64,000 bases of DNA from Macrostomum lignano (Eukaryota): NCBI GenBank assembly GCA_002269645.1, contig NIVC01000023.1, forward strand, positions 1,364,001 through 1,428,000, given 5' to 3'. Both the position numbers and the translations under genes were made by a program. Position 1 is the first letter of the stretch; each line of letters starts with the position of its first letter. The notes under the pieces are model-generated. The model worked only from the letters and a program-made list of their open reading frames with translations. It ran no database searches and had not been told where the DNA came from. Of this stretch, positions 16,925 through 47,796 are shown in pieces.

Positions 16925-17105
16925 ATGGACGAAATTAATCAACTAACTGATGCGGAACTACGCGATGACCTTGCTGTACACATGGGCGACGCAAATGTGC
17001 CCCAGTTACTGACACTACTAGGCACTTGATGCGTCGTAAATTATATAGACTGCGCTCTGGACAACAGTTTGTGTCTGTGTGCAGCACCGACCAAGCTGAA
17101 GATAG
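16925..17105 (+). CDS. LEM-domain inner nuclear membrane protein (emerin/LAP2-like), exon 1 (LEM domain), with apparent 1-nt deletion at C-run 17000-17003
   Basis: MDEINQLTDAELRDDLAVHMGDANVP then, after a frame change, PVTDTTRHLMRRKLYRL matches the LEM motif (L+D.EL...L..........P+T.TTR.+..+KL..L). Donor AG|GTAAG at 17106. Missed by the ORF track. Confidence 0.85.
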
Positions 17106-17171
17106 GTAAGTGTTCTTTTATTTACAAATCAAGGATTTGATTCTTTTTGTGCAAAAAATCTGCTCTCAAAA

Positions 17172-17258
17172 ATGATGACAAAATAGATGACGAGTATGAT
17201 TGGCATAGCAAATAAATCTATGCTTTTTAATGTGAATTTTTATAAGGCATTTGTCTGA
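17172..17258 (+). ncRNA. SNORD15: Box C/D snoRNA, U15/SNORD15 family (LEM intron copy 1)
   Basis: Box C ATGATGA, D' guide TAGATGACGAG, internal stem GCATAG/CTATGC, D guide AGGCATTTG plus CTGA, terminal AAAA/TTTT. Confidence 0.85.
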
Positions 17259-17379
17259 TTTTGAGACAGAATTTAAACTAGTAATTATAGTAAGGTTGTC
17301 TTTATCCCATGAATTAAGTCTTAGTCCTAGTCTTAGTCCGCTTAGTTGCCATGCAGCTTAATATGCTGGATAATCACTC

Positions 17380-17540
17380 AGATTTGATCCCTTGACCAAT
17401 GGGTGCTAGTTGCCATGCAATCAGATAAACACGGCACCAGATTTGATCCCTTGACCAATGGGTGCTAGTTGCCATGCAATCAGATAAGCACACGGCACCA
17501 GATTTGATCCCTTGACCAATGGGTGCTAGTTGCCATGCAG
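17380..17540 (+). repeat. Short run of the 61-bp repeat upstream of the snoRNA module
   Basis: Three CAGATTTGATCCCTTGACCAATGGGTGCTAGTTGCCATGCA cores, the same family as 22297-23605. Confidence 0.9.
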
Positions 17541-17543
17541 TTA

Positions 17544-17670
17544 GTTGTCAATCCCGGTCAAGTTTAATACTGGTGCCAGAGCAACCCAGCTGGCAACAGC
17601 ACACCGCTGCAGCTGTCGCTGACTTCAGAGCGTCCTGGCTGCTGGTGGATGTTAATTCCGGCTTACAGAT
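17544..17670 (+). other. Conserved 127-nt GC-richer structured leader preceding snoRNA subtype a (candidate ncRNA or processing element)
   Basis: Two hairpins (GTTGTCA/TGGCAAC; CACC..GCAGC/GCTGC.GGTG), ending ACAGAT. 10 copies in the window, always at the module head. Function unknown. Confidence 0.4.
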
Positions 17671-17716
17671 AGCTTTATTGCTCAATGCACATTGTTAGTG
17701 ACTGTGCGGACTCGCT

Positions 17717-17801
17717 GTGATGACAATAGATGACGAGATTGACAGGTGCAAACTCGAGTAGTTTGTGCCAATTAGTGAAATTTAATGAGGCATTTGTCTG
17801 A
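17717..17801 (+). ncRNA. SNORD15: U15-family C/D snoRNA, subtype a (LEM intron copy 2)
   Basis: GTGATGA...TAGATGACGAG-A-TTGA...GGTGCAAACT/AGTTTGTGCC stem...GAGGCATTTGTCTGA. Confidence 0.9.
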
Positions 17802-17887
17802 GCCCTGAGTCCTGAGTATATATCTTAGATTTATATGATTTATGAGCTTATCAAGTACATAGAGTACTTTGGGTCATTGTGTTAGCA

Positions 17888-17967
17888 GTGATGACAATTT
17901 AGATGACGAACTGACAGACATAAATAATCAGTGTCTGCTCTGTGATCTTAATGAGGCATTTGTCTGA
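17888..17967 (+). ncRNA. SNORD15: U15-family C/D snoRNA, subtype b (LEM intron copy 3)
   Basis: GTGATGA...TTAGATGACGAA-CTGA...CAGACA/TGTCTG stem...GAGGCATTTGTCTGA. Confidence 0.9.
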
Positions 17968-18024
17968 GAACAAGACCCTATTGCATAGTGTTTATGAGTT
18001 TAGTCAGTTTTTATCAACTCGCTA

Positions 18025-18108
18025 ATGATGACAGAATAGATGACGAGATTGACAGGTGCAAATGATCAGTTTGTGCCAGTTATGAAATTCAAAGAGGCAT
18101 TTGTCTGA
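18025..18108 (+). ncRNA. SNORD15: U15-family C/D snoRNA, subtype c (LEM intron copy 4)
   Basis: ATGATGA...TAGATGACGAG-A-TTGA...GAGGCATTTGTCTGA with a perfect 8-bp terminal stem ACTCGCTA/TAGCGAGT. Confidence 0.92.
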
Positions 18109-18158
18109 TAGCGAGTGTCGCGATTTTTTTATGTTTGATAATAATAGCCTAAACTACA

Positions 18159-18238
18159 ATGATGACAATTTAGATGACGAGCTGATACAGGCATAACTTG
18201 TGCCTTTATAAAGTGATCTTAATGAGGCATTTGTCTGA
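18159..18238 (+). ncRNA. SNORD15: U15-family C/D snoRNA, b-like (LEM intron copy 5)
   Basis: ATGATGA...TTAGATGACGAG-CTGA...AGGCA/TGCCT stem...GAGGCATTTGTCTGA. Confidence 0.9.
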
Positions 18239-18338
18239 GTCCAAAAGCTTAATTTATTGTATATCCTATGGATTTTAATTCCATTATTGATCTATTATGG
18301 AGAGTTGTAAATATAAATAATACTTATTGTATTTTTAG

Positions 18339-18386
18339 CGAAAGCGATGTCAGTGACGGAGACGGCGCCAGAAGACAGCCAGTAAG
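18339..18386 (+). CDS. LEM-domain protein, exon 2 (48-nt symmetric phase 2-2 exon)
   Basis: Acceptor TTGTATTTTTAG, donor AG|GTAATA. Encodes (S)ESDVSDGDGARRQPV, an acidic Ser-rich linker in frame with exons 1 and 3. Confidence 0.65.
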
Positions 18387-19029
18387 GTAATAAATCGTTT
18401 GTTTTATTGAACTCAACTTTTCTACTTGCGATGTGTGAAACTCATAATATATAAGAAATTGGTTGGTGTCTTTGAGTAGAATATTTTGCACTTTTCTCAT
18501 CTTAATTATCAGATTGAACGTAAAGAATCTGATTGAACAACCACACAGGCCATCTAATTTAAAGTACGACTTGTCGATCAACATTACTATTTGTGACTGC
18601 TGTGTTCCTGTCACTATAGCTATTTGGTATGAAAATTCTAGTTGATAATATGTATATGTATAAGTTTTTTTCGGTGCTGGAATAAAAATGTTATTTATGA
18701 ACATATTCAGTTTTGGCTATTTGTTTGAGTTTACAACAGGTAACTTTTTGAGATTCTTAATGTTATGTCTTGAAGAAGCCACACACGATGATTGTAGCGA
18801 TGGTATGCGAGTCTGGCTCGTCTTAAATATGATCAGCTCTGATCTTTTTCGTTTATTATCCCCAAGCTCATCGACTTGGATTGCTTCACGACCTGTAGCC
18901 ATAGCTTTTCATTAGAGTCTATGGCTCGACATGGCTATTCGTACGTAGCAATAATAATAAATAAAACTCTGCCTTTATACTTAAGGCTAGTATGCAACAC
19001 TTAACAAGTATTTAAAGATATAACTTTTT

Positions 19030-19300
19030 CTGTTTGTGTACAATGGACTATAGAGTATGTCAGTGTACATTGGACTATTGAGTCTTTGTGAGTGTACATT
19101 CTGCCATTGATTCTTTGTCAGTGTATATTGGGCCATTGAGTGTTAGTCAGTGTACATTGGGCCATTGAGTGTTAGTCAGTGTACATTGGACCATTGAGTC
19201 TTTGTCAGTGTACGTTGGGCGATTCAGACTTTTTCTATGTACATTTACAAACAAATCTTTGTCAGTGTACTTTAGCTAACAAGTACTTGTCAGTGTAAAT
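19030..19300 (+). repeat. 29-bp minisatellite in LEM intron 2
   Basis: GTCAGTGTACATTGGGCCATTGAGTGTTA units (e.g. 19141, 19170). Confidence 0.9.
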
Positions 19301-19335
19301 TCGCCCAACAAGTCTTTCCCATTGTTTATTCGCAG

Positions 19336-19729
19336 TCCGGGCACTCGCGACACTTCGATGTTCTCCGCCGCAGGCGCAGCCGCCGCTGCCGCATCCAGCC
19401 CAGCAGGTCGCAGGTTCGATTCCACTCCGCAACGTCCCGGAGCTTCACCAGCCGACGATGGCAGCTTCGGCAGCGGTGGCGGTTCAGTTTTCCGCGAAAC
19501 CTATCGCCGACGCCCGTTGCACGAGAATGACGCCGGAACTGGTTACTATGGTAACGTGGGCTCGCCGTCTGGCGCTCGTCCGACCCCAGGAGCCGCCGCA
19601 GCTCCCAGTCGGTTTCGTCCGTCTCTGCTCAACTGCATCCTAGCCCTGGCTCTGATTGGCGCTGTAGCTTTTCTCCTGCTTCATTTTGATCCTCTGTACG
19701 AAAATCCGGTGCCAGAGATCTCTCATTGA
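19336..19729 (+). CDS. LEM-domain protein, exon 3 (low-complexity region plus C-terminal transmembrane helix)
   Basis: Acceptor TTTATTCGCAG, phase 2 compatible. LLNCILALALIGAVAFLLLHF is a TM helix followed by a short lumenal tail. Restored protein is ~207 aa. Confidence 0.85.
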
Positions 19730-21492: not shown

Positions 21493-22187
21493 ATGCTGCC
21501 AAATTCAAATGCCAATCGTCTTTCCCGTTTCCATGGCAACCGATGGCTTATAATGCTGACAATTATGTTGTTGCGGCTATCCCAGCTGGCGTTATTATTA
21601 GCTGAAAATGTTACAACTCAGCCAAGATTCGCAATCAGTAACCTTGAAGGTGTTAATGTTTATCGGTTATCAAGCAGCGATGATAGCGCTGATCAGGTGT
21701 CAGTCAAACCAATGCTGATATTAACCTACGCAGCGACTAGTCAAGCTGCTGCTAGTTCAGTTGCTAAGCAACTGATGCTACTAAAAGACTTTGTTAATTT
21801 GCCATCTTCAACCTCGACAAGGAGTAAAATTGTTGCAGAATTTCTACTACCAACTAGGAGCAACAATACAAACGTTTTAAAAGCATTGCGTCAATTAGAC
21901 TTGGTCGGTTATGAATCCATAACTAAGAAGCGAATATGTCAAATTCTTGCCTGCGAAAAAGATTTAAGCGGACAGCCTGAGTTAGTTGAACAGTTGGTTA
22001 ACAATCTGGCTGACAATGGCTGCAAGGTTAAATCCATTATTACCATAGACAATTGCTATCGAAGCGGCGCGTTGAAAGCGAGGCATCGGGCGTTTAATTT
22101 GACTAATCACTTGCAATGGCAGTTTATCAACTCGGGAGGCCTGGCTGATGACCATGAATACAGACTCAGATTGCGTCGAGACGTCAG
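21493..22187 (+). CDS. CPD: Carboxypeptidase D, coding exon 1 (signal peptide plus degenerate CP-like segment)
   Basis: Hydrophobic N-terminus (RWLIMLTIMLLRLSQLALLLA). Donor AG|GTGAG at 22188 is phase 2 and joins exon 2 as DVR-HHNY. Upstream acceptor TTTCAG at 21425. Confidence 0.75.
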
Positions 22188-22296
22188 GTGAGCGAAGCTG
22201 CACAACTGAAGTTGTTTTTGTTCCCCCATTGGAAATAAAGTTTGTCTTTTCTTAATATAATGTCAAATGTCAAAGATAAGCTGGACTGATGGACTA

Positions 22297-23605
22297 TTGA
22301 CCAATAGGTGCTAGTTGCCATGCAATCAGATAAGCACACGGCACCAGATTTGATCCCTTGACCAATGGGTGCTAGTTGCCATGCAATCAGATAAGCACAC
22401 GGCACCAGATTTGATCCCTTGACCAATGGGTGCTAGTTGCCATGCAATCAGATAAGCACACGGCACCAGATTTGATCCCTTGACCAATGGGTGCTAGTTG
22501 CCATGCAATCAGATAAGCACACGGCACCAGATTTGATCCCTTGACCAATGGGTGCTAGTTGCCATGCAATCAGATAAGCACACGGCACCAGATTTGATCC
22601 CTTGACCAATGGGTGCTAGTTGCCATGCAATCAGATAAGCACACGGCACCAGATTTGATCCCTTGACCAATGGGTGCTAGTTGCCATGCAATCAGATAAG
22701 CACACGGCACCAGATTTGATCCCTTGACCAATGGGTGCTAGTTGCCATGCAATTAAATGAGCACACGGCACCAGATTTGATCCCTTGACCAATGGGTGCT
22801 AGTTGCCATGCAATTAAATGAGCACACGGCACCAGATTTGATCCCTTGATCAATGGGTGCTAGTTGCCATGCAATTAAATGAGCACACGGCACCAGATTT
22901 GATCCCTTGATCAATGGGTGCTAGTTGCCATGCAATTAAATGAGCACACGGCACCAGATTTGATCCCTTGACCAATGGGTGCTAGTTGCCATGCAATTAA
23001 ATGAGCACACGGCACCAGATTTGATCCCTTGACCAATGGGTGCTAGTTGCCATGCAATTAAATGAGCACACGGCACCAGATTTGATCCCTTGACCAATGG
23101 GTGCTAGTTGCCATGCAATTAAATGAGCACACGGCACCAGATTTGATCCCTTGACCAATGGGTGCTAGTTGCCATGCAATTAAATGAGCACACGGCACCA
23201 GATTTGATCCCTTGACCAATGGGTGCTAGTTGCCATGCAATTAAATGAGCACACGGCATCAGATTTGATCCCTTGACCAATGGGTGCTAGTTGCCATGCA
23301 ATCAGATAAGCACACGGCACCAGATTTGATCCCTTGACCAATGGGTGCTAGTTGCCATGCAATTAAATGAGCACACGGCACCAGATTTGATCCCTTGATC
23401 AATGGGTGCTAGTTGCCATGCAATCAGATAAGCACACGGCACCAGATTTGATCCCTTGACCAATGGGTGCTAGTTGCCATGCAATTAAATGAGCACACGG
23501 CACCAGATTTGATCCCTTGACCAATGGGTGCTAGTTGCCATGCAATTAAATGAGCACACGGCACCAGATTTGATCCCTTGACCAATGGGTGCTAGTTGCC
23601 ATGCA
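22297..23605 (+). repeat. 61-bp tandem array, 21 full units, two interspersed variants
   Basis: GCACACGGCA recurs every 61 bp from 22334 to 23554. Variants CAATCAGATAA (A) and CAATTAAATGA (B). No spacers. Confidence 0.97.
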
Positions 23606-23782
23606 GTTAGTTGTCAAGCCCGGTCAAGTTTAATACTGGTGCCAGAGCAACCCAGCTGGCAACAGCACACCGCTGCAGCTGTCGCTGACTTCAGAGCTGC
23701 CTGGCTGCTGGTGGATGTTAATTCCGGCTTACAGATAGCTTTATTGCTCAATACACATTGTTAGTGACTGTGCGGATTCGCT

Positions 23783-23867
23783 GTGATGACAATAGATGAT
23801 GAGATTGACAGGTGCAAACTCGAGTAGTTTGTGCCAATTAGTGAAATTTAATGAGGCATTTGTCTGA
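23783..23867 (+). ncRNA. SNORD15: U15-family C/D snoRNA, subtype a (first CPD-intron copy; D' guide variant GATGATGAG)
   Basis: GTGATGA...GAGGCATTTGTCTGA with the same stems as 17717. Confidence 0.88.
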
Positions 23868-23941
23868 GCCCTGACTCCTGAGTATATAGATTTATATTAT
23901 TTATGAGCTTATCAGGTACATAGAGTGCTTTGGGTCATTGT

Positions 23942-24292
23942 CCAGAAGACACAGCCTGGCGTAATGACAAACTTAACTGGCCATTATTTCAGCTGCATCT
24001 CGTCAGCTCAAGCCTATCATCAGCTTATTCATTTATAGTCTATGGCCCAACAGCTTTTTTACTTATAGTCTATGGCCCAACCACCGCCCTCTTTACGCAG
24101 TCGCACGCACGCAGACTCTTACCCTGAAATAATGACCGCTTCCGGCACGCTGAAATAATGGCCAGGCTGTGTCTTATAGACAATGACGTTGCGTAGTAGG
24201 TAAGGGGCTGAAATAATGGCCATAGAAACTCGTGCGCTACGCGCACTCGTGTTTGGCCATTATTTCAGCCCCTTACTTACTACGCAATCTAC
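23942..24292. mobile_element. 351-bp non-autonomous palindromic insertion with 6-bp direct repeat CATTGT (Crypton-like or MITE); copies at 29063, 34184, 39304, 44425
   Basis: The empty site GGGTCATTGTG is visible at ~27085 and ~28755. CATTGT at 23936-23941 and 24293-24298. Two long internal hairpins (23934-24187; 24188-24289). Confidence 0.7.
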
Positions 24293-24305
24293 CATTGTGT
24301 GAGCA

Positions 24306-24688
24306 GTGATGACAATTTAGATGACGAACTGACAGGCATAATCAGTGTCTGCTCTGTGATCTTAATGAGGCATTTGTCTGAGAACAAGACCCTATTGCAT
24401 AGTGTTTATGAGTTTAGTCAGTTTTTATCAACTCGCTAATGATGACAGAATAGATGACGAGATTGACAGGTGCAAATAATCAGTTTGTGCCAGTTATGAA
24501 ATTCAATGAGGCATTTGTCTGATAGCGAGTGTCACGGTTATATGTTTCACAATATGTGATTGTTACACTAAAGTTTGTCGTGTGTAAATTCTTCCTCTAT
24601 AAAAATGATGACAAAAAAGATGACGAGAATGACTGGCATAGCGACTGTCTTTCCTTCAGTATGAATTATTAATGAGGCATTTGTCTGA
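24306..24688 (+). ncRNA. SNORD15: Cluster of 3 U15-family snoRNAs (b 24306-24381, c 24439-24522, d 24605-24688)
   Basis: Each has RTGATGA, an AGATGACGA guide and GAGGCATTTGTCTGA. Confidence 0.9.
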
Positions 24689-24797
24689 TTTTCAATTTAG
24701 AACTAAGTCAGGCAGCTGTTAGTCAAATAAGTCTTATTACTTGTCCTGAAAATGGAGTATCGGTATATTAAAGCAGGATTTTACTGCCTAATAATAC

Positions 24798-25632
24798 GGG
24801 GCTATAAAATTTGCTTGCGGAAATTTGCTTGCTGAAGTCTGCTTGTCGAATTTTGCTTGCCGAAGTTTGCTTGCAGAAATTTTGCTTGCCGAGGTTTGCC
24901 AGCCACAGTTTTCTTGCGGAACCTTAAAGAACCTATTATTACGCTCTTGTATTTCTAATTTTTATTTTCTATGATTCGTGGAAGTCGCCTATAGTGTTAT
25001 GATTTTGTATGAGGTTTTGGCGGATTTGAAAAGCCGTAATGCATAAATGTAATAATTTAGTTTTTTACTGGGAATACATTTTCAACAAAAATTAGACACA
25101 ATTTCGAACAATGCACATATCGAATGATTTAGGCACCGAAATGTACAGAATAGATTTTTTTAGAAATGAACGTACATTGTACACCAATGAACATCATTTC
25201 TATATACTAAATTCTTAGAATGAAACTCTATAAGCCTAGTTTGAAAGCTTAGTGTCAAGTCAGTTGACGTCGATGCTGATAAGAATCCACTTGCAAAACA
25301 TCTGTAGTAAGTAATAATTGACTGACCAACTTCACAAGCAATCAAAACAAGCAAGCAGACAAGAAAAGAATTCGGCAAGTTTAAACCTTGCAATTATGAT
25401 TGCGAATTTCTAGGAAGCAGACATCAAAATTCCGCAAGCAAAGTTCGGCAAGCAAAGTTCCTGCAAGCAAATTTCCTGCAACTGCAAGCAAAGTTCGGGA
25501 TGCGAAGTTCGGCATACAAAGTTCGGCATGCAAAATTCGGCAAGAAAAATTCGGCCAGCAAAGTTCGGCAGGCAAAATTCCGGCAAGCAAAGTTCGGCAA
25601 GCAAACTTCCCGCAAGCAAACGTCGTACTCCC
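24798..25632. mobile_element. ~835-bp non-autonomous TIR element with inverted arrays of ~13-bp subterminal repeats (GCAAGCAAAGTTCG); copies at ~29919, 35040, 40160
   Basis: Left end GGGGCTATAAAATTTGCTTGCGGAAATTTGCTTGC is mirrored by right end GCAAGCAAACTTCCCGCAAGCAAACGTCGTACTCCC. Absent from the homologous module tail at ~27595. Confidence 0.65.
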
Positions 25633-25834
25633 ATTCCAACCATCGACCATAGTGTTCAATTTCACCAGTCTTATTCCCTTACTTTGCACTCCAGCAGTCC
25701 ATTTTCCACTGCCTCCTCTGGGGAGTTCAAAAGACAGTGCAACCGTTGTTGACCCAGGCCTCAACCCACCCGGTACATGGTTGGCTTGTCGTTCTCATTT
25801 CATGGGTGTTTCAATAAAGTAAAGATCACAATCG

Positions 25835-26244
25835 GTGAAGCCTATCTCCTCTCTGATAGGTGTGAAGGCTGTTGGCTCCAAGGTGATGTGCCTTTGTTAA
25901 GGTCTTGCTTTTGGTCCTGCTAGGTGCCCACGCACCCTACTCAATAATTTGATTACACCTACCCTAATGGACAGATGTGCAACCGACAGCTCAGCGGCAG
26001 CCATTGCGCGGCGCATCTGAAGGCTGCGTACGGCTGTTCAGTCCAAGGACTGGGGGGGGGGGTCGCCACACACACCCTCAATTACCCCAGCTAATGCTGG
26101 CACCCATTTTACAGCTGGGTGAACTGAAGCAATGCAGAGTTAAGTGTCTTGCTCAAGGACACAAATTGTTCCAGTGGGATTTGGGAATCGAACCCCCGAC
26201 CTTCAAGTCGTGAGTCCGACGCTCTGACCACTAGGCTACAACCC
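25835..26244 (-). mobile_element. tRNA-derived CORE-type SINE; copies at ~30956-31365, 36077-36485, 41197-41606
   Basis: Minus strand has A box TAGCCTAGTGG, B box GGTTCGATTCC, then GTGTCCTTGAGCAAGACACTTAAC...CTGTAAAATGGG resembling the MIR/CORE domain. The 3' boundary is uncertain. Confidence 0.85.
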
Positions 26245-26361
26245 TAGCCTAGTGATACTCACTAGGACTCACCAGGATCCTCACTAGGATCCTTAACACC
26301 AGCTGATCCTCAAAAACTGTTAAAGCAGCTAAGTTGGTGTTTCATGTAACTCTTTTGTAAC

Positions 26362-26441
26362 TTGTACAAATAGACGACGAGAATGACTGCATTAACACTT
26401 TCTATGATTCGCTAGGAATTACTATTGAGGCATTTGTCTGA
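26362..26441 (+). pseudogene. SNORD15: Degenerate U15 copy lacking box C; copies at ~31483, 36603, 41724
   Basis: TAGACGACGAG (mutated D' guide) ... GAGGCATTTGTCTGA, with no RTGATGA upstream. Confidence 0.75.
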
Positions 26442-26930
26442 TTTTCAATTTGAAATCGAGTTAGACTCTGGTGAGACAAATAAGCTTTAATTATATAGGT
26501 TTTAAGATTATTGGATTTCCTGTATAAATTAGTCAATCCAATGCTATGTTTTCCTTTATTACCGTCCTGAAAGTAGAGCATTAGTATCTAGTGTAAAATA
26601 GGGTATTAGTAGTGTAGCAGATTTACTGCCTAATAAATCAAGTTATCTTCTATTTTATTTAAGACGCTATTTAAAATTCTAGTTGCCATGCAATCAGATA
26701 AGCACACGGCACCAGATTTGATCCCTTGACCAATGGGTGCTAGTTGCCATGCAGTTAGTTGTCAAGCCCGGTCAAGTTTAATACTGGTGCCAGAGCAACC
26801 CAGCTGGCAACAGCACACCGCTGCAGCTGTCGCTGACTTCAGAGCTGCCTGGCTGCTGGTGGATGTTAATTCCGGCTTACAGATAGCTTTATTGCTCAAT
26901 GCACATTGTTAGTGACTGTGCGGATTCGCT

Positions 26931-27485
26931 GTGATGACAATAGATGACGAGATTGACAGGTGCAAACTCGAGTAGTTTGTGCCAATTAGTGAAATTTAAT
27001 GAGGCATTTGTCTGAGCCCTGAGTCCTGAGTATATATCTTAGATTTATATTATTTATGAGCTTATCAAGTACATAGAGTACTTTGGGTCATTGTGTTAGC
27101 AGTGATGACAATTTAGATGACGAACTGACAGACATAATCAGTGTCTGCTCTGTGATCTTAATGAGGCATTTGTCTGAGCACAAGACCTATTGCATAGTGT
27201 TTATGAGTTTAGTCAGTTTTTATCAACTCGCTAATGATGACAGAATAGATGACGAGATTGACAGGTGCAAATGATCAGTTTGTGCCAGTTATGAAATTTC
27301 AATGAGGCATTTGTCTGATAGAGAGTGTCACGGTTATATGTTTCACAATATGTGATTGTTACACTAAAGTTTGTAGTTTGTAAATTCTTCCTCTATAAAA
27401 ATGATGACAAAAAAAGATGACGAGAATGACTGGCATAGCGACTGTCTTTCCTTCAGTATGAATTATTAATGAGGCATTTGTCTGA
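26931..27485 (+). ncRNA. SNORD15: Cluster of 4 U15-family snoRNAs (a 26931-27015, b 27102-27177, c 27234-27318, d 27401-27485)
   Basis: Boxes and guides as above, preceded by the 61-mer and 127-nt leader at ~26680-26885. Confidence 0.9.
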
Positions 27486-27924
27486 TTTTCAATTTAGAAC
27501 TAAGTCAGGCAGCTGTTAACTTGTTAAGACAAATAAGCCTTATTACTTTTCCTGAAAGTGGAGTATCGGTGTATTAAATCAGGATTTTACTGCCTAATTA
27601 ATACATCATAGCATCAAGCTGTCTAGATTTTGTTTAAAAAGCGTATGACTAATTTTGTACCTCAAATGTTAAATAATTTCAGGTCTTAGTTAGACACCGG
27701 CCTCATTGTCTCTGTATTAATAATGCACCAAATTTCAGGGCCTTCGGCCTTCATGGATTTCGATGCAATATTTTTTATGGGTAGTGCCTTGAATGTCTCA
27801 CTGACTTGAAGATTTAAATACCTTTTGACCAATGGGTGTTATTCAATTACATAAGCACATGGCACCGATGAGTGCTAGTTGCCACGCAATTAGACAAGTA
27901 AATAAACACGCGGCAACTAATTAG

Positions 27925-28292
27925 TGCGTGGGGGCGTAGCCTAGCAGGCGCTCTGATGTACCAGAGGCCCAGGCTCGATTCCAAGTGCAGTCACATTAAT
28001 TTGGGGCTGAATTGGAATCTCGGCTTGGCTCTACTCGTGCAATTAACGCCTGCGTTGAGGGCCACCCCAAGGCACAGTGAAGTGTACATGCCTAACGATA
28101 AATAAAGTTAGGGTCGCTGTACACTCCTGTGTGACTGAGTGAGTGCCTGTGCGTGTGACTGCGTACGTATCCGCGCGCTTGTGTGCCTGCTCAGGGGGGT
28201 CAGCGGAACAGACATAATGCTTCTTGCCGGTTGTGTAACAGTGTCGCTTAAAGTGCGCCATGATGCACACAGCCCTTGTCTCTAATAAAAAA
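27925..28292 (+). mobile_element. Second tRNA-derived SINE family; copies at ~33046, 38166, 43287
   Basis: A box TAGCCTAGCAGG (27937), B-like box GGCTCGATTCC (27972), GC-rich body, AATAAAAAA tail (28284-28292). Inserted among degenerate 61-mers. Confidence 0.7.
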
Positions 28293-28602
28293 CCAACGGG
28301 TGCCAGTGTAAATGCGATACGGCACCAGATTTGATCCCTTGACCAATGGGTGCTAGTTGCCATGCAATCAGATAAACACGGCACCAGATTTGATCTCTTG
28401 ACCAATGGGTGCTAGTTGCCATGCAGTTAGTTGTCAAGCCCGGTCAAGTTTAATACTGGTGCCAGAGCAACCCAGCTGGCAACAGCACACCGCTGCAGCT
28501 GTCGCTGACTTCAGAGCTGCCTGGCTGCTGGTGGATGTTAATTCCGGCTTACAGATAGCTTTATTGCTCAATGCACATTGTTAGTGACTGTGCGGACTCG
28601 CT

Positions 28603-28988
28603 GTGATGACAATAGATGACGAGATTGACAGGTGCAAACTCGAGTAGTTTGTGCCAATTAGTGAAATTTAATGAGGCATTTGTCTGAGCCCTGAGTCCTG
28701 AGTATATAGATTTATATTATTTATGAGCTTATCAAGTACATAGAGTACTTTGGGTCATTGTGTCAGCAGTGATGACAATTTAGATGACGAACTGACAGGC
28801 ATAATCAGTGTCTGCTCTGTGATCTTAATGAGGCATTTGTCTGAGAACAAGACCCTATTGCATAGTGTTTATGAGTTTAGTCAGTTTTTATCAACTCGCT
28901 AATGATGACAGAATAGATGACGAGATTGACAGGTGCAAACTCGAGTAGTTTGTGCCAATTAGTGAAATTTAATGAGGCATTTGTCTGA
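28603..28988 (+). ncRNA. SNORD15: Cluster of 3 U15-family snoRNAs (a 28603-28687, b 28769-28844, chimeric c/a 28902-28988)
   Basis: Boxes and guides intact. Confidence 0.9.
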
Positions 28989-29426
28989 GCCCTGAGTCCT
29001 GAGTATATAGATTTATATTATTTATGAGCTTATCAGGTACATAGAGTGCTTTGGGTCATTGTCCAGAAGACACAGCCTGGCGTAATGACAAACTTAACTG
29101 GCCATTATTTCAGCTGCATCTCGTCAGCTCAAGCCTATCATCAGCTTATTCATTTATAGTCTATGGCCCAACAGCTTTTTTACTTATAGTCTATGGCCCA
29201 ACCACCGCCCTCTTTACGCAGTCGCACGCACGCAGACTCTTACCCTGAAATAATGACCGCTTCCGGCACGCTGAAATAATGGCCAGGCTGTGTCTTATAG
29301 ACAATGACGTTGCGTAGTAGGTAAGGGGCTGAAATAATGGCCATAGAAACTCGTGCGCTACGCGCACTCGTGTTTGGCCATTATTTCAGCCCCTTACTTA
29401 CTACGCAATCTACCATTGTGTGAGCA

Positions 29427-29809
29427 GTGATGACAATTTAGATGACGAACTGACAGGCATAATCAGTGTCTGCTCTGTGATCTTAATGAGGCATTTGTCT
29501 GAGAACAAGACCCTATTGCATAGTGTTTATGAGTTTAGTCAGTTTTTATCAACTCGCTAATGATGACAGAATAGATGACGAGATTGACAGGTGCAAATAA
29601 TCAGTTTGTGCCAGTTATGAAATTCAATGAGGCATTTGTCTGATAGCGAGTGTCACGGTTATATGTTTCACAATATGTGATTGTTACACTAAAGTTTGTC
29701 GTGTGTAAATTCTTCCTCTATAAAAATGATGACAAAAAAGATGACGAGAATGACTGGCATAGCGACTGTCTTTCCTTCAGTATGAATTATTAATGAGGCA
29801 TTTGTCTGA
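29427..29809 (+). ncRNA. SNORD15: Cluster of 3 U15-family snoRNAs (b,c,d), unit 2
   Basis: Copy of 24306-24688. Confidence 0.9.
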
Positions 29810-32051
29810 TTTTCAATTTAGAACTAAGTCAGGCAGCTGTTAGTCAAATAAGTCTTATTACTTGTCCTGAAAATGGAGTATCGGTATATTAAAGCAGGAT
29901 TTTACTGCCTAATAATACGGGGCTATAAAATTTGCTTGCGGAAATTTGCTTGCTGAAGTCTGCTTGTCGAATTTTGCTTGCCGAAGTTTGCTTGCAGAAA
30001 TTTTGCTTGCCGAGGTTTGCCAGCCACAGTTTTCTTGCGGAACCTTAAAGAACCTATTATTACGCTCTTGTATTTCTAATTTTTATTTTCTATGATTCGT
30101 GGAAGTCGCCTATAGTGTTATGATTTTGTATGAGGTTTTGGCGGATTTGAAAAGCCGTAATGCATAAATGTAATAATTTAGTTTTTTACTGGGAATACAT
30201 TTTCAACAAAAATTAGACACAATTTCGAACAATGCACATATCGAATGATTTAGGCACCGAAATGTACAGAATAGATTTTTTTAGAAATGAACGTACATTG
30301 TACACCAATGAACATCATTTCTATATACTAAATTCTTAGAATGAAACTCTATAAGCCTAGTTTGAAAGCTTAGTGTCAAGTCAGTTGACGTCGATGCTGA
30401 TAAGAATCCACTTGCAAAACATCTGTAGTAAGTAATAATTGACTGACCAACTTCACAAGCAATCAAAACAAGCAAGCAGACAAGAAAAGAATTCGGCAAG
30501 TTTAAACCTTGCAATTATGATTGCGAATTTCTAGGAAGCAGACATCAAAATTCCGCAAGCAAAGTTCGGCAAGCAAAGTTCCTGCAAGCAAATTTCCTGC
30601 AACTGCAAGCAAAGTTCGGGATGCGAAGTTCGGCATACAAAGTTCGGCATGCAAAATTCGGCAAGAAAAATTCGGCCAGCAAAGTTCGGCAGGCAAAATT
30701 CCGGCAAGCAAAGTTCGGCAAGCAAACTTCCCGCAAGCAAACGTCGTACTCCCATTCCAACCATCGACCATAGTGTTCAATTTCACCAGTCTTATTCCCT
30801 TACTTTGCACTCCAGCAGTCCATTTTCCACTGCCTCCTCTGGGGAGTTCAAAAGACAGTGCAACCGTTGTTGACCCAGGCCTCAACCCACCCGGTACATG
30901 GTTGGCTTGTCGTTCTCATTTCATGGGTGTTTCAATAAAGTAAAGATCACAATCGGTGAAGCCTATCTCCTCTCTGATAGGTGTGAAGGCTGTTGGCTCC
31001 AAGGTGATGTGCCTTTGTTAAGGTCTTGCTTTTGGTCCTGCTAGGTGCCCACGCACCCTACTCAATAATTTGATTACACCTACCCTAATGGACAGATGTG
31101 CAACCGACAGCTCAGCGGCAGCCATTGCGCGGCGCATCTGAAGGCTGCGTACGGCTGTTCAGTCCAAGGACTGGGGGGGGGGGTCGCCACACACACCCTC
31201 AATTACCCCAGCTAATGCTGGCACCCATTTTACAGCTGGGTGAACTGAAGCAATGCAGAGTTAAGTGTCTTGCTCAAGGACACAAATTGTTCCAGTGGGA
31301 TTTGGGAATCGAACCCCCGACCTTCAAGTCGTGAGTCCGACGCTCTGACCACTAGGCTACAACCCTAGCCTAGTGATACTCACTAGGACTCACCAGGATC
31401 CTCACTAGGATCCTTAACACCAGCTGATCCTCAAAAACTGTTAAAGCAGCTAAGTTGGTGTTTCATGTAACTCTTTTGTAACTTGTACAAATAGACGACG
31501 AGAATGACTGCATTAACACTTTCTATGATTCGCTAGGAATTACTATTGAGGCATTTGTCTGATTTTCAATTTGAAATCGAGTTAGACTCTGGTGAGACAA
31601 ATAAGCTTTAATTATATAGGTTTTAAGATTATTGGATTTCCTGTATAAATTAGTCAATCCAATGCTATGTTTTCCTTTATTACCGTCCTGAAAGTAGAGC
31701 ATTAGTATCTAGTGTAAAATAGGGTATTAGTAGTGTAGCAGATTTACTGCCTAATAAATCAAGTTATCTTCTATTTTATTTAAGACGCTATTTAAAATTC
31801 TAGTTGCCATGCAATCAGATAAGCACACGGCACCAGATTTGATCCCTTGACCAATGGGTGCTAGTTGCCATGCAGTTAGTTGTCAAGCCCGGTCAAGTTT
31901 AATACTGGTGCCAGAGCAACCCAGCTGGCAACAGCACACCGCTGCAGCTGTCGCTGACTTCAGAGCTGCCTGGCTGCTGGTGGATGTTAATTCCGGCTTA
32001 CAGATAGCTTTATTGCTCAATGCACATTGTTAGTGACTGTGCGGATTCGCT

Positions 32052-32606
32052 GTGATGACAATAGATGACGAGATTGACAGGTGCAAACTCGAGTAGTTTG
32101 TGCCAATTAGTGAAATTTAATGAGGCATTTGTCTGAGCCCTGAGTCCTGAGTATATATCTTAGATTTATATTATTTATGAGCTTATCAAGTACATAGAGT
32201 ACTTTGGGTCATTGTGTTAGCAGTGATGACAATTTAGATGACGAACTGACAGACATAATCAGTGTCTGCTCTGTGATCTTAATGAGGCATTTGTCTGAGC
32301 ACAAGACCCTATTGCATAGTGTTTATGAGTTTAGTCAGTTTTTATCAACTCGCTAATGATGACAGAATAGATGACGAGATTGACAGGTGCAAATGATCAG
32401 TTTGTGCCAGTTATGAAATTTCAATGAGGCATTTGTCTGATAGCGAGTGTCACGGTTATATGTTTCACAATATGTGATTGTTACACTAAAGTTTGTAGTT
32501 TGTAAATTCTTCCTCTATAAAAATGATGACAAAAAAGATGACGAGAATGACTGGCATAGCGACTGTCTTTCCTTCAGTATGAATTATTAATGAGGCATTT
32601 GTCTGA
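32052..32606 (+). ncRNA. SNORD15: Cluster of 4 U15-family snoRNAs (a,b,c,d), unit 2
   Basis: Copy of 26931-27485. Confidence 0.9.
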
Positions 32607-33723
32607 TTTTCAATTTAGAACTAAGTCAGGCAGCTGTTAACTTGTTAAGACAAATAAGCCTTATTACTTTTCCTGAAAGTGGAGTATCGGTGTATTAAAG
32701 CAGGATTTTACTGCCTAATTAATACATCATAGCATCAAGCTGTCTAGATTTTGTTTAAAAAGCGTATGACTAATTTTGTACCTCAAATGTTAAATAATTT
32801 CAGGTCTTAGTTAGACACCGGCCTCATTGTCTCTGTATTAATAATGCACCAAATTTCAGGGCCTTCGGCCTTCATGGATTTCGATGCAATATTTTTTATG
32901 GGTAGTGCCTTGAATGTCTCACTGACTTGAAGATTTAAATACCTTTTGACCAATGGGTGTTATTCAATTACATAAGCACATGGCACCGATGAGTGCTAGT
33001 TGCCACGCAATTAGACAAGTAAATAAACACGCGGCAACTAATTAGTGCGTGGGGGCGTAGCCTAGCAGGCGCTCTGATGTACCAGAGGCCCAGGCTCGAT
33101 TCCAAGTGCAGTCACATTAATTTGGGGCTGAATTGGAATCTCGGCTTGGCTCTACTCGTGCAATTAACGCCTGCGTTGAGGGCCACCCCAAGGCACAGTG
33201 AAGTGTACATGCCTAACGATAAATAAAGTTAGGGTCGCTGTACACTCCTGTGTGACTGAGTGAGTGCCTGTGCGTGTGACTGCGTACGTATCCGCGCGCT
33301 TGTGTGCCTGCTCAGGGGGGTCAGCGGAACAGACATAATGCTTCTTGCCGGTTGTGTAACAGTGTCGCTTAAAGTGCGCCATGATGCACACAGCCCTTGT
33401 CTCTAATAAAAAACCAACGGGTGCCAGTGTAAATGCGATACGGCACCAGATTTGATCCCTTGACCAATGGGTGCTAGTTGCCATGCAATCAGATAAACAC
33501 GGCACCAGATTTGATCTCTTGACCAATGGGTGCTAGTTGCCATGCAGTTAGTTGTCAAGCCCGGTCAAGTTTAATACTGGTGCCAGAGCAACCCAGCTGG
33601 CAACAGCACACCGCTGCAGCTGTCGCTGACTTCAGAGCTGCCTGGCTGCTGGTGGATGTTAATTCCGGCTTACAGATAGCTTTATTGCTCAATGCACATT
33701 GTTAGTGACTGTGCGGACTCGCT

Positions 33724-34109
33724 GTGATGACAATAGATGACGAGATTGACAGGTGCAAACTCGAGTAGTTTGTGCCAATTAGTGAAATTTAATGAGGCAT
33801 TTGTCTGAGCCCTGAGTCCTGAGTATATAGATTTATATTATTTATGAGCTTATCAAGTACATAGAGTACTTTGGGTCATTGTGTCAGCAGTGATGACAAT
33901 TTAGATGACGAACTGACAGGCATAATCAGTGTCTGCTCTGTGATCTTAATGAGGCATTTGTCTGAGAACAAGACCCTATTGCATAGTGTTTATGAGTTTA
34001 GTCAGTTTTTATCAACTCGCTAATGATGACAGAATAGATGACGAGATTGACAGGTGCAAACTCGAGTAGTTTGTGCCAATTAGTGAAATTTAATGAGGCA
34101 TTTGTCTGA
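33724..34109 (+). ncRNA. SNORD15: Cluster of 3 U15-family snoRNAs (a,b,c/a), unit 2
   Basis: Copy of 28603-28988. Confidence 0.9.
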
Positions 34110-34547
34110 GCCCTGAGTCCTGAGTATATAGATTTATATTATTTATGAGCTTATCAGGTACATAGAGTGCTTTGGGTCATTGTCCAGAAGACACAGCCTG
34201 GCGTAATGACAAACTTAACTGGCCATTATTTCAGCTGCATCTCGTCAGCTCAAGCCTATCATCAGCTTATTCATTTATAGTCTATGGCCCAACAGCTTTT
34301 TTACTTATAGTCTATGGCCCAACCACCGCCCTCTTTACGCAGTCGCACGCACGCAGACTCTTACCCTGAAATAATGACCGCTTCCGGCACGCTGAAATAA
34401 TGGCCAGGCTGTGTCTTATAGACAATGACGTTGCGTAGTAGGTAAGGGGCTGAAATAATGGCCATAGAAACTCGTGCGCTACGCGCACTCGTGTTTGGCC
34501 ATTATTTCAGCCCCTTACTTACTACGCAATCTACCATTGTGTGAGCA

Positions 34548-34930
34548 GTGATGACAATTTAGATGACGAACTGACAGGCATAATCAGTGTCTGCTCTGTG
34601 ATCTTAATGAGGCATTTGTCTGAGAACAAGACCCTATTGCATAGTGTTTATGAGTTTAGTCAGTTTTTATCAACTCGCTAATGATGACAGAATAGATGAC
34701 GAGATTGACAGGTGCAAATAATCAGTTTGTGCCAGTTATGAAATTCAATGAGGCATTTGTCTGATAGCGAGTGTCACGGTTATATGTTTCACAATATGTG
34801 ATTGTTACACTAAAGTTTGTCGTGTGTAAATTCTTCCTCTATAAAAATGATGACAAAAAAGATGACGAGAATGACTGGCATAGCGACTGTCTTTCCTTCA
34901 GTATGAATTATTAATGAGGCATTTGTCTGA
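34548..34930 (+). ncRNA. SNORD15: Cluster of 3 U15-family snoRNAs (b,c,d), unit 3
   Basis: Copy of 24306-24688. Confidence 0.9.
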
Positions 34931-37171: not shown

Positions 37172-37726
37172 GTGATGACAATAGATGACGAGATTGACAG
37201 GTGCAAACTCGAGTAGTTTGTGCCAATTAGTGAAATTTAATGAGGCATTTGTCTGAGCCCTGAGTCCTGAGTATATATCTTAGATTTATATTATTTATGA
37301 GCTTATCAAGTACATAGAGTACTTTGGGTCATTGTGTTAGCAGTGATGACAATTTAGATGACGAACTGACAGACATAATCAGTGTCTGCTCTGTGATCTT
37401 AATGAGGCATTTGTCTGAGCACAAGACCCTATTGCATAGTGTTTATGAGTTTAGTCAGTTTTTATCAACTCGCTAATGATGACAGAATAGATGACGAGAT
37501 TGACAGGTGCAAATGATCAGTTTGTGCCAGTTATGAAATTTCAATGAGGCATTTGTCTGATAGCGAGTGTCACGGTTATATGTTTCACAATATGTGATTG
37601 TTACACTAAAGTTTGTAGTTTGTAAATTCTTCCTCTATAAAAATGATGACAAAAAAGATGACGAGAATGACTGGCATAGCGACTGTCTTTCCTTCAGTAT
37701 GAATTATTAATGAGGCATTTGTCTGA
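37172..37726 (+). ncRNA. SNORD15: Cluster of 4 U15-family snoRNAs (a,b,c,d), unit 3
   Basis: Copy of 26931-27485. Confidence 0.9.
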
Positions 37727-45631: not shown

Positions 45632-45694
<63 letters not shown>

Positions 45695-47690: not shown

Positions 47691-47796
47691 AAAAAACTTA
47701 TTTGATATTGATATGGGCGATTTCCGAGTTCCTTAAGTTTTATTGGAAATTCTCGCAACTTATACGCACACCCCACCTTGACTTCACTGTTGCCAG

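What the first reader, a model, noticed from the sequence alone, without database searches (positions are those of the whole stretch)
17106..18338. Five C/D snoRNAs packed in one 1.2-kb intron of a nuclear-envelope gene
Seen: 5 diverged U15 paralogs with 50-170-nt spacers (copies 1 and 2 are separated by the 61-mer and leader). Their internal stems differ in sequence but keep pairing (GCATAG/CTATGC, GGTGCAAACT/AGTTTGTGCC, CAGACA/TGTCTG, AGGCA/TGCCT). Established: vertebrate intronic snoRNAs are typically one per intron and released by exonucleolytic trimming, human U15 sits in RPS3 introns, and polycistronic intronic clusters are mainly known from plants. Inference: release needs endonucleolytic cuts between copies or independent transcription, and the host is atypical.
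Basis: partly seen in the sequence, partly recalled or inferred. Interest (0 to 1): 0.7.

Follow-up and report, generated by a model that had tools for sequence, protein, structure and literature searches.

The report
Flatworm U15-type snoRNA intron cluster
Five real copies of an ancient rRNA-methylation guide RNA (the U15/snR75 type) sit in one intron of a flatworm (Macrostomum) LEM-domain gene, but they are only the edge of a 53-copy, recently amplified array that fills the next gene's intron too, so the layout is a known invertebrate/plant style rather than a broken vertebrate rule.

Summary
Window 17106-18338 is a GT..AG intron of a LEM-domain gene, and the organism is Macrostomum lignano or a close relative. 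The intron holds five box C/D snoRNA genes at 17172-17258, 17717-17801, 17888-17967, 18025-18108 and 18159-18238. Boxes and guides are 96% identical between copies, the rest of the body 50%, the flanks 29%. Each copy carries the U15/snR75 double guide, aimed at two 28S positions 7 nt apart (human A3764 and G3771).

No Rfam model reaches its gathering score. Flatworm snoRNAs are known to escape homology searches.

- The "61-mer + leader" between copies 1 and 2 has the full layout of an H/ACA snoRNA (17494-17670).
- The window holds 53 copies of this C/D snoRNA, all on the + strand. Forty-eight lie in the first intron of the next gene, a carboxypeptidase D-like gene, in a 5121-bp repeat unit whose copies are 99.9% identical.
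- The middle 740 bp of the LEM intron is a copy of that array's cassette.

Several snoRNAs in one intron is already known from rice and Drosophila. Processing from the host intron is the likeliest route but is inferred, not shown.

The parts
16925..17105 (+). Exon 1 of the LEM-domain host gene. It has a C run one base shorter (17000-17003) than the paralogous locus, which shifts the reading frame inside the LEM domain.
   Evidence: Frame a gives MDEINQLTDAELRDDLAVHMGDANVP and frame b continues PVTDTTRHLMRRKL. P0001 reads ...ANVPPVTDTTR.
17106..18338 (+). Intron 1 of the LEM gene (GT..AG), host of five C/D snoRNAs and one H/ACA candidate.
   Evidence: The same intron in L001 keeps all six elements in order at 95-99% identity (one spacer replaced), while intron 2 is 85% identical.
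17172..17258 (+). C/D copy 1 (type A), 87 nt. Flanked by an 8-bp terminal stem UCUCAAAA/UUUUGAGA (17164-17266). D' box AUGA.
   Evidence: Best Rfam hits are snoMe28S-Am2589 at 29.2 bits (gathering score 37), snR75 at 24.1 and snoR21 at 30.3.
17379..17493 (+). 61-bp tandem repeat. Each unit repeats the first 46 nt of hairpin 1 of the H/ACA candidate plus a 13-15 nt linker.
   Evidence: There are 2.7 copies here, more units in L001 (186 extra bases in the alignment) and 21.5 units at 22297-23609.
17494..17670 (+). Hairpin 1 is 17494-17577, H box AGAGCA 17578-17583, hairpin 2 17588-17663, and ACA 17665-17667 followed by 3 nt.
   Evidence: MFE -69.2 kcal/mol, z -3.1, none of 200 shuffles as stable; layout filter; 10 copies in the window; no Rfam hit.
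17717..17801 (+). C/D copy 2 (type B), 85 nt. Flanking stem GGACUC/GAGUCC, 10-bp internal stem, D' box UUGA.
   Evidence: 100% identical to array copies.
17888..17967 (+). C/D copy 3 (type C), 80 nt. External stem GGGUC-UUGU/ACAAGACCC. D' box CUGA lies one nt closer to the guide.
18025..18108 (+). C/D copy 4 (type D), 84 nt. 8-bp terminal stem ACUCGCUA/UAGCGAGU.
18159..18238 (+). C/D copy 5 (type E), 80 nt. No terminal stem. Its D box ends 100 nt upstream of the 3' splice site. This type occurs only in the LEM intron.
17379..18115 (+). Cassette (61-mers, H/ACA candidate, copies 2, 3 and 4) shared with the downstream array: 94-100% identity over the snoRNAs and leader, 88-100% over the spacers.
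18339..19729 (+). Rest of the LEM gene: exon 2 18339-18386, intron 2 18387-19335, exon 3 19336-19729 (C-terminal transmembrane tail, stop at 19727-19729).
21493..22188 (+). Probable exon 1 of the next gene (carboxypeptidase D-like), with a GT donor at 22189.
   Evidence: The 1517-aa gene called in L001 starts at the same ATG.
22297..23609 (+). 61-bp repeat array of 21.5 units. The last unit runs straight into an H/ACA candidate copy.
23560..45226 (+). Array of 48 further U15-type C/D copies and 9 H/ACA candidate copies inside the carboxypeptidase gene's first large intron. The core is a 5121-bp higher-order repeat whose units are 99.9-99.98% identical. Each unit has 10 intact C/D copies, 1 copy without a C box and 2 H/ACA candidates.
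47778..48155 (+). First recognisable Peptidase_M14 coding exon after the array (coordinates are ORF limits, not splice sites).
   Evidence: PF00246, E = 1.4e-34.

Best explanation
The five elements are working genes for a short (80-87 nt) flatworm form of the ancient U15/snR75/snR13 methylation guide.

Shown by the sequence:
- The D guide GAGGCAUUUGU places the fifth base upstream of box D opposite the last A of CCAAAUGCC in 28S rRNA. This is yeast A2281, human A3764 and Drosophila A2589.
- The D' guide UAGAUGACGAG places the fifth base upstream of D' opposite the G of CUCGUC, 7 nt downstream. This is yeast G2288 and human G3771.

Inferred mechanism:
- The copies are transcribed as part of the LEM-gene pre-mRNA. 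The 48 array copies are transcribed as part of the carboxypeptidase pre-mRNA.
- Each unit assembles a C/D snoRNP on its kink-turn. Terminal or external stems on copies 1-4 help this. Copy 5 has no such stem but lies 100 nt from the 3' splice site.
- The spliced-out intron is cut in the 50-86-nt spacers and trimmed by exonucleases up to each snoRNP. This is how intronic snoRNA gene clusters of rice and Drosophila are thought to work.
- The H/ACA candidate would be released from the same intron.

The cluster is one end of a family that grows by local tandem duplication. The latest round made 5121-bp units that are 99.9% identical.

My confidence by step: about 0.9 that these are genuine U15/snR75-type guides, about 0.55 for processing from the host intron, about 0.6 for the H/ACA reading.
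For: Selection pattern:
- Across the five copies, boxes plus guides (33 columns) are 96% identical. The rest of the body is 50% and the flanks 29%.
- All 39 invariant columns fall in the boxes, the guides and a few neighbouring positions.

Family:
- All five copies give near end-to-end, sub-threshold matches to families that carry the same guides in different kingdoms: snoMe28S-Am2589, snR75, plant SNOR75, Tetrahymena TtnuCD10 and Plasmodium snoR21. The matched letters are the two guides.
- Human SNORD15A uses D' for G3771 and D for A3764 (PMC5027482). The two guides here overlap on one continuous target with the same 7-nt offset (read directly from the sequence).

Structure:
- A hairpin follows D' in all five copies.
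- Flanking stems on copies 1, 3 and 4 beat shuffles (p <= 0.04). Copy 2 has a 6-7 bp stem.

Conservation:
- The paralogous locus L001 keeps all five copies and the H/ACA candidate in order. Four of the five snoRNA bodies are 98-99% identical (copy 3 is 93%), one spacer has been replaced, and intron 2 is only 85% identical.

Host orientation:
- All 53 copies in the window and all 22 in L001 are on the strand of the host genes, none antisense.

Precedent:
- Intronic gene clusters are known in rice and Drosophila (PMC2780460).
Against: - No expression data were available, so no RNA ends, no methylation and no processing step has been seen.
- No Rfam model reaches its gathering score.
- Same-strand orientation is weak evidence. 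Tandem duplication keeps orientation, so there are really only two independent placements.
- The cassette always begins with a repeat array whose units each carry a CCAAT motif, which could be a promoter.
- D' boxes in copies 1, 2 and 4 are non-canonical (AUGA, UUGA).
- In copies 3 and 5 the CUGA lies one nt closer, so the strict fifth-base rule points to the neighbouring U rather than the G.
- Some array copies are clearly degenerate. Four lack a C box, and the commonest A-type has no internal or terminal stem.
The target is inferred from universal conservation and from the family consensus.
Confidence: 0.62

Rival explanations
1. The cassette (61-mer array, H/ACA candidate, copies 2-4) is its own transcription unit inside the intron. 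A promoter in or next to the 61-bp repeats would drive a polycistronic snoRNA precursor. An RNase III-type enzyme plus exonucleases would then cut it up, as in yeast, plant and trypanosomatid clusters. Copies 1 and 5 alone would be truly intron-processed.
For: - The cassette moves and multiplies as a unit and always starts with the repeat and the 'leader'.
- Each 61-mer holds a GACCAATGG motif of the CCAAT-box type.
- The cassette sits in the introns of two unrelated, non-ribosomal host genes, which would be odd hosts if expression depended on them.
- Copies 1 and 5 are unique to the LEM intron and lie outside the cassette.
Against: - The 61-mer is explained more simply as a partial duplication of hairpin 1 of the H/ACA candidate. 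The CCAAT motif lies at the edge of that hairpin's upper stem and apical region.
- Four cassettes in the window have a single unit instead of an array.
- No promoter model for flatworm snoRNA genes exists to test against.
- Every cassette is sense to its host gene.
Confidence: 0.22
2. Most copies are dead passengers of a young satellite-like repeat. Only one or a few copies, perhaps elsewhere in the genome, supply the functional U15-type RNA, and the LEM-intron set is mostly relics.
For: - Repeat units are 99.9-99.98% identical, too young for selection to have acted on them.
- The unit carries transposon debris: a tRNA-derived SINE-like piece and a palindromic MITE-like insert.
- Four copies lack a C box, one has a mutated D' guide and one a UUGA D box.
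Against: - The five types A-E are old. Their bodies are 50% identical outside the functional elements, yet boxes and guides stay at 96%. Each lineage was therefore under selection for a long time.
- Copies 1 and 5 are not part of the young repeat and are 98-99% conserved in L001.
Confidence: 0.1
3. The large array is an assembly artefact (over-expanded repeats), and only the LEM-intron cluster plus one or two cassettes are real.
For: Near-identical 5.1-kb units are the kind of sequence that long-read assemblers can miscount.
Against: - L001, a different contig about 92% identical in unique sequence, independently shows at least four cassettes and 22 copies. It has a different period, about 2.2 kb instead of 5.1 kb.
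- The units differ by a few real substitutions and indels.
Confidence: 0.05

Closest known systems
Human SNORD15A/B (U15), Rfam RF00067, clan CL00045
   Same: Same double guide in the same order. The D' guide GAUGACGAG targets 28S G3771 and the D guide GAGGCAUUUGU targets A3764, 7 nt apart (PMC5027482). Both are intron-encoded.
   Different: - U15 is about 146 nt with a long internal region. These copies are 80-87 nt.
- U15 sits one per intron in RPS3 (my own knowledge, Tycowski et al. 1993). Here five lie in one intron of a LEM gene.
- The Rfam model scores only 18 bits against a gathering score of 75, on model positions 96-141.
Yeast snR75 (RF01185) and snR13; Drosophila snoMe28S-Am2589 (RF00529)
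   Same: snR75 has the same D' guide UAGAUGACGAGU (25S Gm2288). Me28S-Am2589 has the same D guide GAGGCAUUUGUCUGA. Sizes are similar (88-109 nt). The best Rfam scores for copy 1 are among these families.
   Different: In yeast and Drosophila the two guides are carried by separate snoRNAs. Here, as in human, plant SNOR75, Tetrahymena TtnuCD10 and Plasmodium snoR21, one RNA carries both. Scores are below gathering: 24.1 against 40 and 29.2 against 37.
Intronic snoRNA gene clusters of rice and Drosophila melanogaster
   Same: Several snoRNA genes lie in one intron of a protein-coding or non-coding host, sense to the host and separated by short spacers (PMC2780460).
   Different: As I recall them, those clusters are not part of tens-of-copies tandem arrays. 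Here all five C/D members are paralogues of one guide, mixed with an H/ACA candidate. Mixed C/D plus H/ACA clusters are described as uncommon in Drosophila (PMC5932544).
Tandemly repeated snoRNA arrays: mammalian SNORD115/SNORD116, and the Euglena and trypanosomatid snoRNA repeat clusters (my own knowledge)
   Same: Tens of near-identical snoRNA copies in head-to-tail repeats, all in one orientation.
   Different: SNORD115/116 are orphan guides, one per intron of a repeated non-coding host. The Euglenozoan clusters are independent polycistronic units. Here a canonical rRNA guide is amplified inside one intron of a protein-coding animal gene.

Membership tests
Box C/D snoRNA (class) | C box RUGAUGA near the 5' end and D box CUGA near the 3' end | tested here: met
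   5 of 5 copies have AUGAUGA or GUGAUGA, and CUGA.
Box C/D snoRNA (class) | Short terminal stem that brings the C and D boxes together | tested here: met
   Copies 1-4 have 6-9 bp terminal or external stems. Those of copies 1, 3 and 4 beat shuffles. Copy 5 has none.
Box C/D snoRNA (class) | Antisense element of at least 9-10 nt ending next to D or D', complementary to rRNA, with the target opposite the fifth base | tested here: inconclusive
   - The guides are identical to the guide segments of the snR75, SNORD15, Me28S-Am2589, TtnuCD10 and snoR21 consensus and to the published SNORD15A pairing.
- In copies 3 and 5 the D' register is shifted by 1 nt.
Box C/D snoRNA (class) | Stable RNA of defined ends bound by fibrillarin, NOP56, NOP58 and SNU13 | not testable with these tools
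   No expression or RNP data were available.
SNORD15 (Rfam RF00067) | Covariance-model score at or above the gathering score of 75 bits | tested here: not met
   Best score is 18.2 bits, on model positions 96-141 only. Nothing reaches gathering in the whole window.
SNORD15 (Rfam RF00067) | Double guide: D' to the G3771 equivalent and D to the A3764 equivalent | tested here: met
   Both guide sequences are present in all five copies, in that order.
snoMe28S-Am2589 (RF00529) and snR75 (RF01185) | Score at or above gathering (37 and 40 bits) | tested here: not met
   29.2 and 24.1 bits for copy 1, lower for the others.
Intronic snoRNA gene cluster (rice/Drosophila type) | Two or more snoRNA genes within one intron, on the sense strand of the host | tested here: met
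   Five C/D copies and one H/ACA candidate lie in intron 17106-18338 of a + strand gene. The exons match P0001.
Intronic snoRNA gene cluster (rice/Drosophila type) | snoRNAs are released from the host pre-mRNA intron, with no promoter of their own | not testable with these tools
   This needs transcription start and RNA-end data.
Box H/ACA snoRNA (for 17494-17670) | Hairpin-hinge-hairpin-tail layout, with an H box ANANNA in the hinge and ACA after hairpin 2 | tested here: met
   - MFE structure with AGAGCA in the hinge and ACA 1 nt after hairpin 2.
- A crude layout filter passed 18 of 7259 positions in the window. Ten of these are copies of this element at -69 kcal/mol. The other eight are at -11 to -32 kcal/mol.
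Box H/ACA snoRNA (for 17494-17670) | Internal loop (pseudouridylation pocket) whose top lies 14-16 nt from the H box or ACA | tested here: met
   - Hairpin 1: 7-nt 3' pocket strand plus 8-bp lower stem gives 15 nt to the H box.
- Hairpin 2: 16 nt to ACA, provided a weak 4-bp helix (AGCA/UGUU) is open (read).
Box H/ACA snoRNA (for 17494-17670) | Pocket strands complementary to an rRNA or snRNA site flanking a U, and covariation in the stems | not tested
   No Macrostomum rRNA was at hand. All 15 copies are at least 97% identical, so there is no covariation signal. No Rfam family matches.

The most novel reading that the evidence does not exclude
The cassette (61-bp repeat, H/ACA candidate, three U15-type C/D genes) is a self-contained snoRNA gene module that is still expanding. 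It would carry its own promoter and multiply by tandem duplication inside introns. The family would also have split into two guide forms: 38 copies in the canonical D' register and 15 copies shifted by one nt. These would methylate neighbouring 28S nucleotides at the base of helix 71, near an intersubunit bridge. A flatworm would then tune guide dosage or ribosome heterogeneity through copy number.
Probability: 0.1. Interest if true: 0.65.

Novelty: new member of a known kind. Interest (0 to 1): 0.4.

Why it matters
- Flatworm snoRNAs are almost unannotated. A homology survey of Schistosoma found no clear homologue of any known snoRNA except U3 (PMC2770079).
- This locus gives a securely assignable flatworm guide RNA, because both guides are readable by eye. 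It shows that the human-type double guide is kept in a compact 80-nt form.
- It extends the intronic-cluster organisation from insects and plants to Platyhelminthes.
- The 53-copy array is a ready natural experiment. The types differ in their internal sequences, so ordinary small-RNA data could show which copies are expressed. The same data could show whether intron position or flanking stems predict yield.
- Macrostomum lignano is transgenic-tractable, so the choice between intron processing and independent transcription can be tested directly.
- The result is not a break with known biology. It is a clear, somewhat extreme case of a known arrangement.

Tried and rejected
- **Rfam at gathering thresholds, whole window:** no hits. 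I did not read this as 'no snoRNA', because the permissive scan recovered guide-matched families for every copy.
- **Spliced-leader RNA gene as the 'leader':** a search with the M. lignano SL sequence as I recall it, allowing up to 3 mismatches, found nothing. Rejected, although the query came from memory.
- **miRNA precursor for the 'leader':** the only hit is mir-191 at 17.6 bits against 54. Rejected in favour of the two-hairpin H/ACA layout.
- **Column-wise covariation test on MAFFT alignments A1 and A2:** the 3' arms of the internal stems are out of register for copies 3 and 5. I folded each copy separately and counted pairs only for copies 1, 2 and 4.
- **Protein search with the carboxypeptidase exon 1:** no homologues. 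The exon assignment rests on the L001 gene call starting at the same ATG.
- **ARAGORN:** no tRNA genes. The tRNA-like Rfam hit (27.5 bits against 29) is read as a SINE-like relic.
- **Pfam on the ORFs inside the 5.1-kb unit:** nothing. They are not genes.
- **First H/ACA control scan:** timed out. It was rerun with fewer lengths.
- **The sigma-70 promoter scanner:** not used, because it does not apply to an animal genome.
Full report
**What is at 17106-18338**

- The stretch is a GT..AG intron.
- The flanking exons are 16925-17105, 18339-18386 and 19336-19729. They translate to a small protein with an N-terminal LEM domain and a C-terminal membrane anchor.
- The only database relative is Macrostomum lignano BOX15_Mlig005543g1 (P0001, 207 aa, Pfam LEM, 94% identity, full coverage).
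- The organism is therefore a free-living flatworm, M. lignano or a very close relative, not a vertebrate.
- P0001 is encoded on GCA_002269645.1 contig NIVC01000073.1, fetched as L001. L001 is a paralogous or homeologous copy of this neighbourhood, roughly 92% identical in unique DNA.

**The five copies are real**

From C box to D box they span 17172-17258, 17717-17801, 17888-17967, 18025-18108 and 18159-18238, all on the + strand. Each reads, in order:
- a C box (A/G)UGAUGA;
- UAGAUGACGA(G/A), followed by a D' box (AUGA, UUGA or CUGA);
- a hairpin;
- a weak C' box (NUGAA or NUGAU);
- (G/A)AGGCAUUUGU, followed by the D box CUGA.

Across the five copies, the 33 box-and-guide columns are 96% identical pairwise. 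The other 56 body columns are 50% identical and the flanks 29%. That is the signature of long-standing selection on function, not of recent copying.

**Stems**

- Every copy folds a hairpin right after D', built from different sequences.
Copies 2 and 4 share one stem.
- Where the alignment is in register (copy 1 against copies 2/4) there are two double compensatory changes and three one-sided changes.
- Per-copy significance against shuffles is strong for copies 2 and 4 (z about -3.2) and modest for copies 1, 3 and 5 (z -1.0 to -1.9).
- Copies 1-4 also have 6-9 bp terminal or external stems. Copy 5 has none, and its D box ends 100 nt before the 3' splice site.
- From my own knowledge (Hirose, Shu and Steitz 2003): mammalian intronic C/D snoRNAs near the branch point assemble in a splicing-dependent way, and badly placed ones rely on external stems. 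The pattern here fits that, but this is an analogy, not a test.

**Which family**

- No Rfam family reaches its gathering score anywhere in the window.
- With permissive thresholds, every copy gives sub-threshold matches, most of them spanning the whole model. The families are snoMe28S-Am2589 (29.2 bits against 37), snR75 (24.1 against 40), plant SNOR75, Tetrahymena TtnuCD10 and Plasmodium snoR21. SNORD15 matches on its 3' part only (18 bits against 75). The aligned identities are exactly the two guides.
- The two guides overlap on one continuous target, CAAAUGCCUCGUCAUCUA (with one mismatch at the base next to box D). This is the universally conserved 28S segment at the base of helix 71 (my own knowledge).
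- By the fifth-base rule, box D selects the last A of CCAAAUG and box D' selects the G of CUCGUC, 7 nt apart.
- Human SNORD15A does the same: D to A3764 and D' to G3771 (Krogh et al. 2016, PMC5027482).
- I therefore file the copies as working like U15/snR75. Formal membership of the Rfam families was tested and not met.
- A Schistosoma survey likewise found no unambiguous homologue of any known snoRNA but U3 (PMC2770079). Weak model scores are therefore expected in flatworms.

- In copies 1, 2 and 4, two bases separate GACGAG from UGA. This is the same register as human U15, but the D' boxes are non-canonical.
- In copies 3 and 5 only one base separates them, and the D' box is a canonical CUGA.
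- Taken strictly, copies 3 and 5 point at the U next to the G.
- Window-wide the split is 38 to 15 copies. Whether this matters is unknown.

**The '61-mer and leader'**

- Positions 17494-17670 fold into hairpin, AGAGCA, hairpin, ACA plus 3 nt. The MFE is -69.2 kcal/mol, z is -3.1, and none of 200 shuffles is as stable.
- Internal loops have tops 15 nt from the H box and 16 nt from ACA, which fits the H/ACA geometry.
- A crude layout filter was applied at every ACA on both strands. It passed 18 of 7259 tests. Ten were copies of this element at -69 kcal/mol. The other eight were AT-rich folds at -11 to -32 kcal/mol.
- The 61-bp repeat is a tandem duplication of the first 46 nt of hairpin 1 plus a linker.
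- No Rfam family matches. The copies are too alike for covariation, and no target could be sought.
- I rate the H/ACA reading at about 0.6.

**The wider picture**

- The 15-mer of D guide plus D box occurs 53 times in the window, against 0.2 expected.
- A profile built from twelve distinct copies finds 53 full copies and one fragment in the window, and 22 copies in L001. All are on the + strand.
- By type the window holds 14 B, 14 C, 10 D, 13 A2 (four without a C box), one A and one E.
- Forty-eight copies lie between 23.6 and 45.2 kb. That is after the GT donor at 22189 of a probable first exon (21493-22188) and before the Peptidase_M14 exons that start near 47778. In L001 a 1517-aa carboxypeptidase D-like gene is called from the same ATG across the equivalent repeats.
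- The core of the array is a 5121-bp higher-order unit repeated about four times at 99.9-99.98% identity. Each unit carries ten intact C/D genes, one degenerate copy and two H/ACA candidates. It also carries transposon debris: a tRNA-derived SINE-like piece and a palindromic MITE-like insert.
- In the LEM intron, 17379-18115 (61-mers, H/ACA candidate, copies 2-4) matches the array cassette at 94-100% over the snoRNAs and leader, and 88-100% over the spacers. Copy 1, copy 5 and their flanks are unique to the intron.
- L001 keeps the whole LEM-intron set in the same order. Four of the five snoRNA bodies are 98-99% identical (copy 3 is 93%). One spacer is replaced, the number of 61-mers differs, and intron 2 is only 85% identical. 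L001's carboxypeptidase intron has cassettes at about 2.2-kb spacing instead of 5.1 kb.
- The family is therefore real in two independent loci and turns over fast.

**How it most likely works**

- Shown: gene structure, boxes, guides, stems, copy number, orientation, and conservation between two loci.
- Inferred: the copies are transcribed within the host pre-mRNAs, each assembles its own snoRNP, and the excised intron is cut in the spacers and trimmed. [quoted passage not shown]
- The main rival is that the cassette has its own promoter and yields a polycistronic precursor. I rate it at about 0.22. The cassette behaves as a unit and its repeats carry CCAAT motifs, but the H/ACA hairpin accounts for those motifs.
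- That most copies are inert repeat passengers is likely for part of the young array. It is unlikely for the five old types.

**Verdict**

- This is a new member of known kinds: a U15/snR75-type guide in an intronic snoRNA gene cluster, in a phylum where snoRNAs are barely described.
- Its unusual features are the scale and youth of the amplification and the mixed C/D plus H/ACA cassette.
- Nothing here needed a referred step.

Noticed in passing
window 17494-17670 (and 9 more copies, e.g. 23560-23736, 26708-26884, 28380-28556): The 'leader' between C/D copies 1 and 2 has the full hairpin, H box (AGAGCA), hairpin, ACA layout of an H/ACA snoRNA, with pocket-to-box distances of 15 and 16 nt. No Rfam family matches it.
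   Followed up: partly
window 17379-17539, 22297-23609; L001 10452-10806: The 61-bp satellite is a tandem duplication of the 5' arm and apical part of hairpin 1 of that H/ACA candidate. Copy number varies widely between sites: 2.7 units in this LEM intron, 21.5 at 22297-23609, and about three more in L001's LEM intron than here.
   Followed up: partly
window 17000-17003: The C run in LEM exon 1 is CCCC here and CCCCC in L001/P0001, which shifts the frame in the middle of the LEM domain. Downstream exons stay open in the shifted frame. It is therefore either a homopolymer assembly error or a frameshifted allele or paralogue that still serves as a snoRNA host.
   Followed up: partly
window 23560-45226: A 5121-bp higher-order tandem repeat, about 4 units at 99.9-99.98% identity, lies in the first large intron of a carboxypeptidase D-like gene. 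It carries 48 further U15-type copies. The paralogous locus L001 has about a 2.2-kb period instead.
   Followed up: yes
window ~23931-24290 (repeated at ~29050-29410 and in later units): A roughly 360-bp insert with a long perfect palindrome (ttgcgtagtaggtaaggggctgaaataatggcca ... its reverse complement) lies in the spacer between type B and type C copies. It looks like a MITE-type transposon and gives weak miRNA-precursor hits (mir-2807, 28 bits against 54).
   Followed up: no
window 26175-26245 minus strand (repeated every 5121 bp): A tRNA-like sequence just below the Rfam tRNA threshold (27.5 bits against 29) that ARAGORN does not call. It is probably the head of a tRNA-derived SINE. It lies about 120 nt upstream of the degenerate C/D copy that lacks a C box.
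   Followed up: partly
window copies 3 and 5 (17905-17915, 18176-18186) and all type C array copies: The D' box lies one nt closer to the guide than in copies 1, 2 and 4 and in human U15. The fifth-base rule then points to the U next to the conserved Gm site. Window-wide, 15 copies are shifted and 38 canonical.
   Followed up: partly
window 18387-19335 against L001: Intron 2 of the LEM gene is 85% identical between the two loci, while the snoRNA-bearing intron 1 is 95-99% identical outside one replaced spacer. This fits either constraint on intron 1 or gene conversion within it.
   Followed up: no
window 19058-19270, 20532-20991, 45455-46282, 46642-47688: Several other minisatellites with periods of 14-29 bp flank the two genes and give long spurious ORFs. 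The region as a whole is very rich in repeats.
   Followed up: no
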